DNA of 64,000 nucleotides from Podarcis gaigeae (taxonomy: Eukaryota): assembly GCA_964106915.2 (NCBI GenBank), contig OZ066923.1; one strand, 5' to 3'. The notes below the pieces were generated by a model. It was not told the DNA's origin. It saw only the letters and a program-made list of their open reading frames with translations, and ran no database searches. A program made the position numbers and the translations under genes. This document shows positions 41,791 through 50,529 of this stretch, one piece after another (within the stretch, counting starts at the first letter, position 1; each line of letters starts with the position of its first letter).

Positions 41791-41950
41791 TGAAATAAAA
41801 TCCTCTTTCTCCGCAGACAAATTGAAGAGCGTCAACCAGCTCAGCACCACAAAGTGTCTCCGGGGCAGCAGCAGCAGAGGAGCTGGTTAATGTAAGCAAA
41901 CACAGGCCAAAGTAGAAGAGATGAATGTAGGACACAGTGTGCATCTTCAC
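41791..41950 (-). CDS. IGF1: IGF1 coding exon 2 (= mammalian exon 3): rest of signal peptide and B domain
   Basis: Pyrimidine tract ...cttttacttctttggcag|GTG AAG ATG, then [53 protein letters not shown]+A|gtaagt. 160 nt with a phase-1 donor, as in other IGF1 genes. Lies inside ORF 41744..42064. Confidence 0.99.
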
Positions 41951-42211
41951 CTGCCAAAGAAGTAAAAGAGAGAGAGAGACTGCATCAGAGTTTCCCAGTA
42001 GAATCCTGAAGCATGGCCTTTTTTTGGGAAATTTCCCATTCTGCTTCACCCACCAGGTCCACACTGTTCCTCTCCCACCTCCTATTTACTGTGAAAGTTG
42101 GTTGCCATATGCCATGTGTTAGGAGAACCCCTGGTGCTTTTGACAAAAGTGAACTTTAAAGCAAATTTGGCAAAGGGAAAACTTGGAGATTTGATAAGAG
42201 CATTAGCATTA

Positions 42212-44722: not shown

Positions 44723-45927
44723 TAATGTTTGGAGCAATGAGTCTTCCTGCCTGCCTGGTCAGTTTTTCAGCACTGTCCAATTGTGTGGCTTGTACAGAAT
44801 TAGAAAACCTAATTCTGCACCCACCAGGGTTTAACTTGAGCCAAACCTTGTTTGTGGGTTCAGTCACAGAAGATACTTTCAAATATAGGGCTCATCCCAG
44901 GAACATGTGAAGTCATTAACAGGGCACCACTGAACATGTGTTGGGTGCATTTCGTTCTTCCCTGAGCAACTGCTTTTTGCCCACACATATCTGGGACTGG
45001 TGGGGGAAAGGCACAGAGAGCCCAGGGCTTCCAGACAGAGGCATGGACTCAAGCCTCCCTTGATTGGAAATGGACATTCTCCCACCATATGTGAGACAAC
45101 CAGGGCAGGGATCAAGCCAAGCCACATCCCATGCAGTCAAAGATCATGCAAATCAATCCTCTGAGGGAAATTGTAGGGTGGGGAGGGGTAGAAAAACACG
45201 GAAAACGTCCAGAGTCCAAAGTCTCTAAAGACTTTCCAGTCCCTTTGTTATGAAGACTGTTCCTGAAAGTGTAGGGAAAAGAGAGTTGCCAGATTCAATA
45301 GAAGACAAAGCTTCTCTAACCACTGTAACTCACAGAGTTGCCCCTGCCTCCCCCAAAATGCTCTTTTGCATTACAGTTAAAAGCACAGGAGCCCTACCCT
45401 GAGTATATTATTGATCCTGGCAGCTAATAGGTAAACCCAGGCAGTGTTACAGTTGTCAGTTTGCAGAGGGTTTAAATCAACAGATATAGTATGGTTCAAC
45501 TGCAAAGGGCAAGGCCAAATGGATTGGGTGTGGTCCAGCTACCAAAGCAGCTCTAAACCCTTGTATAAATGCTGTTTAAATTAGGATTAGCAGCTGCTTT
45601 GTGTTACTGGAGCAGCACAAAGCAGCTGCAGTGAACTGATCTCTCCTGGACATCAGTGACAATTTAGTCACATTCTTCCCCAGAACGTTTGATGGACCAG
45701 GCGGAAATGGCAAACACAAGCACCATCAAAGCACAAAAGCACTTCTTATGTTTTGTTAGATTCAGAAGCAACTGGGAACACCTAAACACCTGCTAGATAG
45801 GAATTCTGAAATACAGCTGGGACTGGTTCTAGTGTGCTGCTTATTACTTCTTCCAGGACACTCCATTCTGAATCTCCTTGGTTTTCTCCAGCTCCCTGCA
45901 ACAGATGCTCAACATTTTCTGGCTACT

Positions 45928-46278: not shown

Positions 46279-47767
46279 CCACCCCCAACCCACTCACACT
46301 GATACCTCCATCTTGTTTTTCAGCTGTGTTTTGGCCACATTAACATCATGATCCTACACATTTGTTATATTGAGTAATCCTTCATATATAAGACATTTCT
46401 CAACTCCCCCCCCCCAGCACTGTATCATATCCCAACATGACCAAAACCCCAGATCCAGAAGAGCCTATGCAAATAGGAAAAGAGGATATTCTCAATGGCT
46501 GGGTTCACCCTGGTTGTAAAGTAGGTTTGGTCTCAGTAGTGTCCTCTTTCACTTTGTCCCATATGGCTGCCATTCACTCTCATTGGAAAAAGTACATGGT
46601 AAGCTTATTCTGTAAGGCATGACTGGAGAACCTGTGGTCCTCCAGGTATTTGTCAGCCCCACCAAGCATGGCCAACAGACAGGGATGATGGGAGTTGGAT
46701 CCCAGCAACATCTGGAACATGGTTTCCCATTGCTAGCATAAGGGCAGAATCTACCCTTGGCAACACCTGGACTGGTCCTACCATCCAGGGAGCTCATGGT
46801 TAATACAGAGCAAGTGAGGATCCATTGCCCCTGCGCAGGCCTTGCTCTTTGCAAGCCAACACTCTATGCCCAGCTATGACTGGTGGGTTAATTGCTAGAT
46901 TGTATTGAAACAGCTAGTATAGAAGCTGGAACCATCACTTTCATTCATCATACTGACATTGATACAATGAAAACATCCAACACAAAGACCAAAATGAGAT
47001 ACACCAAGGAGTGATTGGAAAATACCCCTTCTTCCCATTTGCAACATGAGTCCTCCCTCAGCTTTGTAACGTTAAAAAATAAATTGGCAAAACAAAAGAA
47101 AAACCCTGAATGCATGAACATGACAGTAAAGCCCCTCTGTATTTCATTCTTAAAGCTCTGAAGAGGCGATGTTTTAATAATATCACTTCCTCTGTTCAAT
47201 GATATCTTAAAAGCTGTTGCGTGCAGAGGTAAATCACCTGCTGACTTCATGCTCTTGCTTCCAAGGATGCAGTTCAAAGAGCTCTTCCATCATGGTCTCA
47301 ACGGAATGGCATTGTGTATCTGTCTAAGAACACTGTGTGTTTAGCAGGGTGTTCTTAATTCACATCTGGCCTTGCCTCAAACATAAGCCTCATTCAGCAA
47401 TGTTATATTTTTTAAAGACTTTTCAGGAGAGTTACGTTGTAAGTGAAATATCAGTTCTGGGACAAGATACAGGGTTTCCATGTTCCCCCCCTTCTTTAGT
47501 GCAAGCCAAGAATATGACACAATGCAATTGCCAAGAGTTTCAACACTCCCCCACCCTGACAAATTATAAAACAATCAATGACTTGGAGGAAAGGGATGGA
47601 TTCATATGCTCCTAGGCCAAATGGACCTATCGACCTAGCTCTGAAAAAACATAAAATTGTCCCTTAAAGAATATTCAGGAATCTGACAGAAATAATACTC
47701 TCTTCTGTACCTTTCCTGTTCATTTTCATTTAGATGGGGATGGTGGGATTCATAAGAAAATACTTAC

Positions 47768-47925
47768 GATGATCTAACAATTTGGCCGCTGGTCTTTTCA
47801 ATAGGTCGGGGTGTGTCCAATTTATTGTATGTCCAAATTGAATGGGAAACAGAGGCCTTTAAAAGCACACACTGTCATGTGGGTGGAGTTTTATTGAAGC
47901 ATCTGATTACATTTGGACTCTGAGT
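47768..47925 (-). other. IGF1: Putative homolog of mammalian IGF1 alternative leader exon 2 (non-coding here)
   Basis: Minus strand GTCCAAATGTAATCAGATGCTT...AAACTCCACCCACA...CACCCCGACCT..TGAAAAGACC...AAATTGTTAGATCATC|gtaagtattttct. Motifs are collinear with human exon 2 as I recall it; consensus donor; about 2.2 kb downstream of exon 1. Confidence 0.65.
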
Positions 47926-48000
47926 CTGACTCAGGACAGTGCAAGGCAGACTAAACACCCCTATAATGAATGACCAATTGTGTTTACAGCTGAGATTTTC
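47921..48000 (-). promoter_or_regulatory. Candidate promoter-2-like region with AP-1 (TGACTCA 47927-47933) and forkhead (TGTTTAC 47981-47987) motifs
   Basis: Motifs lie directly 5' of the exon-2-like segment, in a TE-poor stretch. Confidence 0.35.
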
Positions 48001-50083
48001 ACGAATCTCTCCTTCAGGAGAAGATCCAGTGTCTACTGCATGTGGAGAGTGGCGGTCCAAAACAGTGGCACTTAAGGAAGCCAACAGATGGCTTGCTCCA
48101 TGGCTTTTACACCTTCCTTGCCCTTCCGCAACTCCTCCCATTCAACAAGCTTTAAATCAAGCAGCACATATGAATGTTCCAGCGAAATTTGGGTGAGCGC
48201 TGATTCGTCTAAACGGATGACGCTTTCAATTGACTGAAAACATTTCTCAGAGACACAGCGGTGGCAGCAGGGATGCCACAGATTAAAATGCATTCATTTG
48301 TATGTTTCCGAACTTGTCTGGCTGCCCCAAGAACCAAGTATCAGTCTATGCTAAGTAAATACACATGCAAACTGCCCTACTGTCAAAGACAGCACTACAA
48401 ATCATCAATCTGTTACTAGACACATCTTGTGATAGAGAAATAACCTAACACAGTGGATACAATCAAAGTAATGCAGTGGAAGATTTAAACAAGAGGTCTA
48501 AACGGATGGTTTTCCCAACCGACAATCACAAGTCACACAGCCTCTAGTTCCCATGGAAAGGGATTAGCAAAATCAATGCAGATAGCAGAATGTAAAGGAA
48601 ATTTGGGGGTAGACCCCCGTGCTTCTAGCTCATATGAAAGGGTCTAGTAGAATCCGGAATGTTGGGGAAAGCACCCATACAATATATTGCTTATCTCTTT
48701 CTGAAGATGCCTTTGACCCCTCTTAGAACTTCTGGACTGAAACTGCAGTCCTTCTTAGACTCACTAGGGAGTAAGTCCCTTAGAGCTTAGTCAGATGTGG
48801 CTCTGTTAGCATGTTTAGGTCATGCACACCAAACTGGCAGAAGCTGTCTTCACTTATAAATTGGGATAGCTCAGTTGATTTCAGTAGACCATGGCTAAAT
48901 GACAGCAATTTGGAATCTGTAGTATATTGGAGATATATATATATATAAACAACCTCAGTAGTTTAATTCCAACTCTTCAGTAAACTGAGCAAAGGATGCA
49001 CATAGTTGTGGAGTTGTAACTCTGACTCTCCAATGGCTACTGAATTCAGCAATGCATTGCATTGCATTCTGTTTGCTTCTACTGTTACAAAATCCCCCCA
49101 TCTTAAAATGAAATGGATAAATCCTACTTAGATAATTAAAAAAACAAAACTAAATTGGCACCTATTGCTTTAGAGACTGTGTCAGCTGTACAAAATCCTG
49201 CTACAAATGGAAAAACAAAACAAAAAAAATTGTTCTTGAAGGATATAATCTTGCTGAGAATGGAAACTTGAGTGAAGGCCAGCTGAGAGAAACAGAGGTC
49301 AGTGCATCTACTGAAGCCAAAATTAACCTTAAAAGCTTTTTATGTTCTTAAGGAGCAATGACTAGTAATATGGTATAAAAATTCCATCTCCAACTTTGCC
49401 TGACTAAAGCCTCTTTGCAGAGTGCAAAATAAAGCTTGACTGGAAGATATCTCTACTTTCCTTAATGCAGAATAACTTAATCTTATCATCAATCTGCATA
49501 GCCAGCAAAAGCTGTACATGGTTTCTGTTTTAGAAAAGGAAAAACAAACTTAATGTTGACTTAACAGGAAAGCATTAAAAAGAAGTAAATGTACAACACT
49601 GTCAGAAAACAGCTGTACATTCAATGTTAATTCTGTGCATATAGCAGTCTTACAGAAGTGAACCAGCTACCTGCTGTCAAATGACTATCACATTTGCATT
49701 TGCACCTGCAGAGAAACTTTAAAATTTCTTGCTCCATGCTAGCAGCACTAGCTACAGAAAATGATGTTAGTAGAAATTTCAGATATGACAAGCTAGCCAG
49801 AATTTTGCAAAAAAGTTTCCCCAACACAAGCTGAATTCCTAAGTACCTGCAATAGCTTTACCTCGTCAGTTACCTAGCTGTGTTCAGAACAACCATCACA
49901 TGCAGTCATTCTTCAGCTCTGCTAAAATTGTCTGTTCAGCAGTTTAGAAATAAAATTCCCAGTACAGAAATAATGACACTGAAAAAAGTGCATATAACAC
50001 TCTTCTAAGCAGAATCAGATTACACACAATATAATCATAATATTTTCTTTAAAAAGAAAAATCAAATAGGAAGAAAGATTTAC

Positions 50084-50146
50084 CTTCAAGAAATCACAAA
50101 AGCAGCACTTAAATAATTGTGTTGAAAGACTGTTGATTTTTTCCAT
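50084..50146 (-). CDS. IGF1: IGF1 coding exon 1 (class 1 leader, N-terminal 21 aa of the prepropeptide)
   Basis: Reverse complement reads ATG GAA AAA ATC AAC AGT CTT TCA ACA CAA TTA TTT AAG TGC TGC TTT TGT GAT TTC TTG AAG|gtaaat = [21 protein letters not shown], the sauropsid IGF1 exon 1 peptide. 63 nt, phase-0 GT donor. Too short to appear in the ORF track. Confidence 0.98.
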
Positions 50147-50271: not shown

Positions 50272-50529
50272 NNNNNNNNNNNNNNNNNNNNNNNNNNNNN
50301 NNNNNNNNNNNNNNNNNNNNNNNNNNNNNNNNNNNNNNNNNNNNNNNNNNNNNNNNNNNNNNNNNNNNNNNNNNNNNNNNNNNNNNNNNNNNNNNNNNNN
50401 NNNNNNNNNNNNNNNNNNNNNNNNNNNNNNNNNNNNNNNNNNNNNNNNNNNNNNNNNNNNNNNNNNNNNNNNNNNNNNNNNNNNNNNNNNNNNNNNNNNN
50501 NNNNNNNNNNNNNNNNNNNNNNNNNNNNN
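50272..50529. other. Assembly gap (258 N) over the expected IGF1 transcription start region
   Basis: Run of n between the 5'UTR and the proximal promoter. Confidence 0.99.

What the first reader, a model, noticed from the sequence alone, without database searches (positions are those of the whole stretch)
47761..48000. Apparent lizard homolog of the mammalian IGF1 alternative leader exon 2 / promoter 2, with an intact splice donor
Seen: on the gene strand, about 2.2 kb into intron 1, the sequence is GTCCAAATGTAATCAGATGCTTCAATAAAACTCCACCCACA...TGCTTTTAAAGGCCTCTGTTTCCCATTCA...CACCCCGACCTATTGAAAAGACC...AAATTGTTAGATCATC, followed by the consensus donor GTAAGTA (exon end 47768). Recalled, not computed: human exon 2 reads roughly GTCCAAATGTAACTAGATGCTTTCACAAACCCCACCCACA...TGTTTTTAAGACTTCAGTTTTCTATTCA...CACCCTGACCTGCTGTAAAAGACC...AAAATGATTACACCTACA, giving at least five collinear blocks in the syntenic position. 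Non-mammalian IGF1 genes are generally described as having one promoter and no class 2 leader. Here the MITPT start codon aligns to TTG, and there is an in-frame TAG two codons before the junction, so the exon would be non-coding and translation would start at the Met of VKMHT, giving a shorter signal peptide. Inference: the two-promoter architecture may be ancestral to amniotes, with the coding ATG gained in mammals or lost in reptiles. AP-1 and forkhead motifs lie just upstream.
Basis: partly seen in the sequence, partly recalled or inferred. Interest (0 to 1): 0.85.

Follow-up and report, generated by a model that had tools for sequence, protein, structure and literature searches.

The report
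Lizard keeps IGF1's second leader exon
The second start exon and promoter of the growth-factor gene IGF1, described as a mammal-only feature, is also present in this lizard and in a gecko, a snake, alligators and a finch, so it dates back to the common ancestor of mammals and reptiles; its use in this lizard is likely but was not seen in RNA.

Summary
Homology confirmed; use inferred. Window 47768-47923 (minus strand, IGF1 of a lacertid-like lizard) is the ortholog of mammalian IGF1 exon 2 and its proximal promoter. It matches a rodent exon 2 at the syntenic place: 69% identity, E 1e-21 with a sauropsid-only profile, same donor position, same CCACCCAC box 121 bases upstream of the donor. The element is also in gecko, snake, two alligators and a finch, and not detectable in a frog. 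The GTAAGTA donor is kept in gecko, snake and alligators, and the finch has lost four bases of it. Best evidence of use: NCBI isoforms of four advanced snakes begin with a 23-residue leader that, in the one snake genome read, is this exon, ending at the same donor. In lizard and gecko it is non-coding, like the marsupial and platypus exon. So the ancestral exon was probably non-coding, and placentals and advanced snakes gained start codons separately. No RNA run was available for this lizard. The AP-1 and forkhead motifs are not conserved, and no paired STAT5 sites were found in introns 1-2. The accessible literature gives non-mammals one IGF1 promoter. No earlier scan note covered this.

The parts
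50084..50146 (-). IGF1 exon 1 coding part (21-residue class 1 leader) and its donor
   Evidence: aligns to exon 1 of rodent, finch, frog, alligator, snake, gecko
47924..48203 (-). Upstream flank of the element, conserved among squamates (85% mean column identity lizard/gecko/snake), weak or absent in alligator, finch and rodent; candidate extended promoter 2 region
   Evidence: promoter function inferred
47768..47923 (-). Ortholog of mammalian IGF1 exon 2 plus proximal promoter 2 (90% to gecko, 80% to snake and alligator, 66% to finch, 69% to rodent over aligned bases)
47879..47888 (-). CCACCCAC (CACCC/GT-box) core, invariant in all six amniotes aligned; 121 bases before the donor in lizard, gecko and rodent
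   Evidence: identity with the functional CACCC box of rat promoter 2 is inferred (paper title seen; its position recalled, paper not held)
47809..47836 (-). Positions that align to the two rat exon 2 start sites (about 50 and 70 bases before the donor); predicted start zone, not observed
   Evidence: PMC3607797 mapped through alignment A4
47768..47836 (-). Stretch that is a 23-codon coding leader in advanced snakes; here it has TTT where the snake has ATG, one extra base near the end, and an in-frame TAG at 47776-47774, so it is non-coding
47760..47767 (-). Splice donor GTAAGTAT, at the same alignment column as the rodent exon 2 donor and the donor used in the annotated snake isoform
41791..41950 (-). 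IGF1 exon 3 with acceptor at 41951 and the Met (third codon) that would start a 26-residue signal peptide on exon 2 transcripts, against 49 residues for class 1
   Evidence: cleavage site inferred from homology to the mature N-terminus

Best explanation
The element is the squamate ortholog of IGF1 exon 2 / promoter 2 and works as an alternative, non-coding first exon. Shown: orthology, conserved CACCC-type box, conserved donor, absence of an in-frame start in lizard and gecko. Inferred: a TATA-less promoter around the CACCC box starts transcription about 50-70 bases before the donor, the exon is spliced from 47768 to exon 3 at 41950, and translation starts at the exon 3 Met, giving the same mature IGF1 behind a 26-residue rather than 49-residue signal peptide. 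The exon arose by the amniote ancestor as a non-coding leader; placentals gained an ATG 15 bases before the donor, and advanced snakes gained another 69 bases before it along with a one-base loss that removed the stop.
For: Syntenic match to rodent exon 2 through the donor, E 1.3e-21 with a profile built without the rodent; reversed controls and frog blank. The lizard-alligator match spans 47923-47754, i.e. about the 160-165 bases given for mammalian exon 2 and ends just past the donor. Donor GT(A/G)AGTA kept in lizard, gecko, snake, two alligators and rodent. NCBI isoforms of Crotalus tigris, Notechis scutatus, Thamnophis elegans and Ahaetulla prasina start with a 23-residue leader that maps 100% to this exon in Ahaetulla, ends at this donor and continues in frame into exon 3. 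Lizards, pythons and boas have NCBI isoforms that start at the exon 3 Met, including Podarcis lilfordi X2. The three ATGs in the lizard element all lie upstream of the mapped start zone. The same non-coding state is reported for opossum, devil, platypus, rabbit and squirrel.
Against: No RNA run holds this stretch; all four runs laid were genomic contigs. The snake models are predictions whose read support I could not see, and annotation runs can borrow from each other. Isoforms starting at the exon 3 Met also exist in frogs, axolotl and birds, and squamates have other alternative 5' exons, so they do not single out this exon. The finch keeps the promoter block but lost four bases of the donor, so the block can be conserved without this splice. 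The exonic side of the donor (ATC) is non-consensus. No paired STAT5 sites in the lizard's introns 1-2, whereas the rodent has a pair 1.5 kb into intron 2.
Confidence: 0.72

Rival explanations
1. Orthologous element, but in this lizard it acts as an intronic regulatory element (enhancer or weak promoter serving promoter 1); the donor is a remnant that is rarely or never used, and real exon use is limited to mammals and some snakes.
For: No lizard RNA evidence. The most conserved part is the upstream promoter block, not the transcribed part, and the finch keeps it with a damaged donor. A survey of 21 non-mammals reported one promoter (PMC6317063 citing Rotwein 2018).
Against: An unused donor should decay, yet GTAAGTAT is intact in lacertid, gecko, snake and alligators, and GTAAGTA is unique on the gene strand of the window. 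Four snake annotations use the same junction.
Confidence: 0.2
2. The exon is spliced but is not a first exon: it is an internal or extended 5' UTR exon of transcripts that start further upstream (in the squamate-conserved 47924-48203 stretch or at exon 1 or beyond), with short upstream reading frames that damp translation.
For: Squamate conservation runs about 280 bases upstream of the amniote core. The snake ATG sits at the distal rat start site, so its use needs a start further upstream. Three short upstream frames lie in the lizard element.
Against: Orthology to a mapped mammalian promoter with its CACCC-type box at identical spacing; I did not search for a splice acceptor, and none is evident in the alignments.
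Confidence: 0.07
3. Chance similarity, repeat or assembly artefact.
For: Pairwise identity to rodent is only 69%.
Against: No shuffle of 200 reached the score; profile E 1e-21; syntenic in six species; no tandem repeat or Rfam match; genomic contigs agree.
Confidence: 0.01

Closest known systems
Placental IGF1 exon 2 / promoter 2 (class 2 leader; rat, mouse, cattle)
   Same: Position in intron 1 (1.9 kb in the rodent, 2.3 kb here, donor to donor), sequence blocks, CACCC-type box 121 bases before the donor, donor position, same exon 3 acceptor
   Different: No 5-residue coding leader (TTG for ATG, in-frame TAG); no paired STAT5 sites in introns 1-2; start sites, expression and growth-hormone response untested
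Marsupial and monotreme IGF1 exon 2 (opossum, Tasmanian devil, platypus; PMC5730178)
   Same: Homologous exon without a reading frame; translation would start at the exon 3 Met
   Different: Reported by DNA homology within mammals; their DNA was not fetched here
NCBI-annotated IGF1 isoforms of advanced snakes (XP_058047440.1, XP_039194120.1, XP_026550799.1, XP_032077564.1)
   Same: Same exon and same donor; 76-85% protein identity to the lizard's stretch read in the snake frame
   Different: Coding in snakes (23-residue leader), non-coding here; the records carry only isoform numbers and do not name it as exon 2
[quoted passage not shown]
   Same: Lack of the mammalian growth-hormone STAT5 enhancers agrees with what I saw in introns 1-2
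   Different: An exon 2 / promoter 2 ortholog is present in five sauropsid lineages. The paper itself was not held, so one of its 'extra' reptile exons could be this one, unrecognised

Membership tests
IGF1 exon 2 / promoter 2 (class 2 leader) | Lies between exon 1 and the signal/B-domain exon of IGF1, about 1.5-2.3 kb after exon 1 | tested here: met
IGF1 exon 2 / promoter 2 (class 2 leader) | Significant collinear sequence homology to a mammalian exon 2 | tested here: met
   rodent Scotinomys: 69% identity, 0 of 200 shuffles, profile E 1.3e-21
IGF1 exon 2 / promoter 2 (class 2 leader) | Splice donor at the homologous position | tested here: met
IGF1 exon 2 / promoter 2 (class 2 leader) | TATA-less proximal promoter with a CACCC box | tested here: met
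   motif invariant in six amniotes, no TATA motif in 47760-48300; sequence level only
IGF1 exon 2 / promoter 2 (class 2 leader) | Spliced to exon 3 in mRNA | tested here: inconclusive
   no RNA run for this lizard; junction annotated in four snakes
IGF1 exon 2 / promoter 2 (class 2 leader) | Own transcription start sites 50-70 bases before the donor | not testable with these tools
   needs CAGE or 5'RACE; mapped only by alignment
IGF1 exon 2 / promoter 2 (class 2 leader) | Liver-enriched, growth-hormone-responsive expression | not testable with these tools
   no expression data; no paired STAT5 sites in lizard introns 1-2; distant enhancers not examined
Placental coding class 2 leader (five residues) | ATG 15 bases before the donor, in frame with exon 3 | tested here: not met
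   TTG and in-frame TAG; also missing in marsupials and platypus, so not required for exon 2 identity
Snake coding leader (23 residues) | ATG 69 bases before the donor and open frame into exon 3 | tested here: not met
   TTT at that place, one extra base and TAG in lizard and gecko
Structured non-coding RNA or tandem repeat | Rfam match or repeat array | tested here: not met

The most novel reading that the evidence does not exclude
The two-promoter IGF1 design is an amniote invention, promoter 2 is active in squamates without the nearby mammalian STAT5 sites, and the same ancestral non-coding leader was turned into signal-peptide coding sequence twice, in placentals (5 residues) and in advanced snakes (23 residues, translated), while at least one bird has damaged the donor.
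Probability: 0.45. Interest if true: 0.72.

Novelty: new member of a known kind. Interest (0 to 1): 0.6.

Why it matters
IGF1 is the central growth and life-history hormone gene, and promoter 2 is the arm that responds most to growth hormone in mammalian liver (PMC3607797). The accessible literature treats it as a mammalian addition. If it is amniote-wide, its origin moves back to the mammal-reptile ancestor (over 300 million years, general knowledge), the coding leader becomes a late add-on gained twice, and reptiles give a natural test of whether promoter 2 came before its growth-hormone/STAT5 control. It also matters for reptile IGF1 assays placed in exon 1, which would miss these transcripts. 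The limit on importance: mice lacking class 2 transcripts grow normally (PMC3607797), and the mature hormone is unchanged.

Tried and rejected
Rotwein 2018 (Endocrinology), Rotwein 2018 (JBC) and Wang 1998 are not held; literature searches found no paper describing a reptile or bird exon 2, which is weak because most subscription papers are missing. The gecko Heteronotia isoform leader MIAIRYQ looked like an exon 2 product but maps, in Gekko, to another donor 385 bases into intron 1: rejected. Loci for platypus, softshell turtle and coelacanth were not on record and Heteronotia came without DNA, so the outgroup rests on one frog. AP-1 and forkhead motifs: not conserved. The sequencing-run search gave no RNA run and the contigs laid were genomic, without joints. 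The lack of substitutions in 47672-47868 in one related lizard is not used as evidence, since an equally long blank lies in plain intron. Rfam and tandem-repeat scans blank.

Full report
Setting. The window holds the 5' part of IGF1 on the minus strand: exon 1 coding part 50146-50084 and exon 3 at 41950-41791. The leader and exon 3 protein are identical to Podarcis and Lacerta entries, so the animal is most likely a lacertid lizard (inference). Exon 4 is not in the window. The masked run 50272-50529 was left alone.

Observation. GTAAGTA is found once on the gene strand of 64 kb, at this place. A genomic run reproduces 46800-48900 exactly, though it may be the source of the assembly, and two related lizards carry it at 95-99%.

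Homology. I fetched IGF1 loci of a rodent (Scotinomys, L001), a finch (L002), a frog (L003), two alligators (L004, L005), a snake (Ahaetulla, L006) and a gecko (L007). In the rodent, 47918-47823 matches a stretch 1.76 kb after exon 1 that runs on to the coding leader MTAPP and the exon 2 donor. Local scores against shuffles: rodent 49, finch 50, alligator 92, snake 175, shuffled maximum 29-32; frog 22, chance. A profile built from sauropsids alone finds the rodent exon through its donor at E 1.3e-21 and nothing in frog or reversed controls. Identity to the lizard from the first block to the donor: gecko 90%, alligator 80%, snake 80%, rodent 69%, finch 66%. The lizard-alligator match covers 47923-47754, close to the 160-165 bases listed for mammalian exon 2 (PMC5730178). 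Homology is therefore shown, and the element is at least amniote-wide; one fast-evolving frog is thin evidence that it is absent outside amniotes.

Anatomy. The best conserved block is CCACCCAC, 121 bases before the donor in lizard, gecko and rodent. A CACCC box is required for basal activity of rat promoter 2 (title of Wang 1998, seen); from memory it lies 53 bases before the first major start site, which would put it at this block, but the paper was not held. Rat class 2 transcripts start about 50 and 70 bases before the donor (PMC3607797), which maps to 47809 and 47836. The three ATGs of the lizard element lie upstream of that zone and close within the exon. The donor column reads GTAAGTA in lizard, gecko, snake and alligator and GTGAGTA in the rodent; the finch lacks four bases there and has another GTAAGTA about 45 bases upstream. 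Squamates share a further 280 bases upstream. The AP-1 and forkhead motifs are lizard-only. There is no TTCnnnGAA pair in the lizard's introns 1-2, while the rodent has one 1.5 kb into intron 2.

Is it used? No RNA run holds the lizard stretch, and the contigs laid were genomic, so there is no direct evidence in this species. The indirect evidence is good. NCBI isoforms of a rattlesnake, a tiger snake, a garter snake and a vine snake begin with a 23-residue leader before exon 3. In the vine snake genome this leader is the exon 2 ortholog: all 23 residues match, it ends at the same donor, and exon 3 continues the frame. It is 76-85% identical to the lizard's 47834-47775 read in that frame. Alternative RefSeq isoforms normally rest on aligned transcripts (my knowledge; support not inspected, and annotation runs can share protein evidence). 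Lizards, pythons and boas have isoforms that start at the exon 3 Met, which fits a non-coding exon 2 but does not prove it, because frogs, axolotl and birds have them too and squamates have other 5' exons.

History of the start codon. All sauropsids read have TTG where the rodent has ATG, and opossum, devil and platypus have no frame in exon 2. The simplest reading is a non-coding ancestral exon and an ATG gain in placentals. The snake ATG is elsewhere, 69 bases before the donor, where lizard and gecko have TTT, and the snake also lacks the one base that gives lizard and gecko their TAG. That is a second, independent recoding. Caveat: the snake ATG sits at the distal rat start site and has C at -3, so it may be outside or skipped in many transcripts and the annotated leader may partly reflect a longest-frame rule.

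Mechanism, shown and inferred. Shown: orthology, conserved box and donor, non-coding state, snake models using the donor. Inferred (0.72): promoter 2 starts transcription near 47809-47836, the exon is spliced to 41950, and translation from the exon 3 Met gives a 26-residue signal peptide instead of 49, with unchanged mature IGF1. Rivals: regulatory element with a little-used donor (0.2); internal or extended UTR exon (0.07); artefact (0.01).

Against what is known. [quoted passage not shown] From memory, the 2018 abstract says there is no homolog of promoter 2 or exon 2 in any of them; the paper was not held. My searches found no report of a reptile exon 2, with the limits of the library. The element is a member of a known kind in a group where it was reported missing; the snake leader is in the databases but not named as exon 2.

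The two notes returned by the findings search concern other genes and were not used.

Verdict. Interest 0.6: surprising to an IGF specialist and directly testable, but limited by the lack of lizard RNA evidence and by the mild effect of losing class 2 transcripts in mice.

Noticed in passing
window 49671/49670 (minus strand); L007 2428-2448: A second donor in intron 1 (CAG|GTAGCT) is kept in this lizard and in Gekko; in Gekko the seven codons before it read as the leader MIAIRYQ of Heteronotia isoforms X3 and X6. In the window the matching stretch has stops and is non-coding. Not found in the snake by exact search.
   Followed up: partly
window 49205-49325 (minus strand): Conserved non-coding element about 0.8 kb into intron 1, 95% to rodent over 38 bases and alignable to gecko, snake, alligator, finch and even frog; older than the exon 2 element. 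It resembles a branch point and acceptor in squamates, but the AG is missing in alligator, finch and rodent.
   Followed up: partly
window 45409-45730 (minus strand): Block in intron 2 conserved among squamates (77% to snake, 83% to gecko), not seen in alligator, finch or rodent; possible squamate enhancer or extra exon.
   Followed up: no
window 47325-47588 (minus strand): Block 0.2-0.45 kb after the exon 2 donor conserved among sauropsids (67-69% to alligator, finch, gecko), not in the rodent.
   Followed up: no
L006 9383-9638: Isoforms of two elapid snakes use an upstream exon that ends about 360 bases before the exon 1 start codon; the matching place in the window falls at or next to the masked run and was left alone.
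   Followed up: partly
L002 11910-11975: The finch lacks GTAA at the ancestral donor but has a GTAAGTA about 45 bases upstream; birds may have shifted or lost the splice. One bird only.
   Followed up: no
L004 3715-3867: Alligators lack about 19 bases covering the distal start-site position, and the last 25 codons before their donor are open in frame with exon 3 but have no ATG.
   Followed up: no
proteins P0031, P0033: Some mammalian gene models extend the exon 2 frame upstream to an earlier ATG (squirrel, titi monkey), showing that longest-frame annotation can read promoter sequence as coding; a caution for the snake leader too.
   Followed up: no
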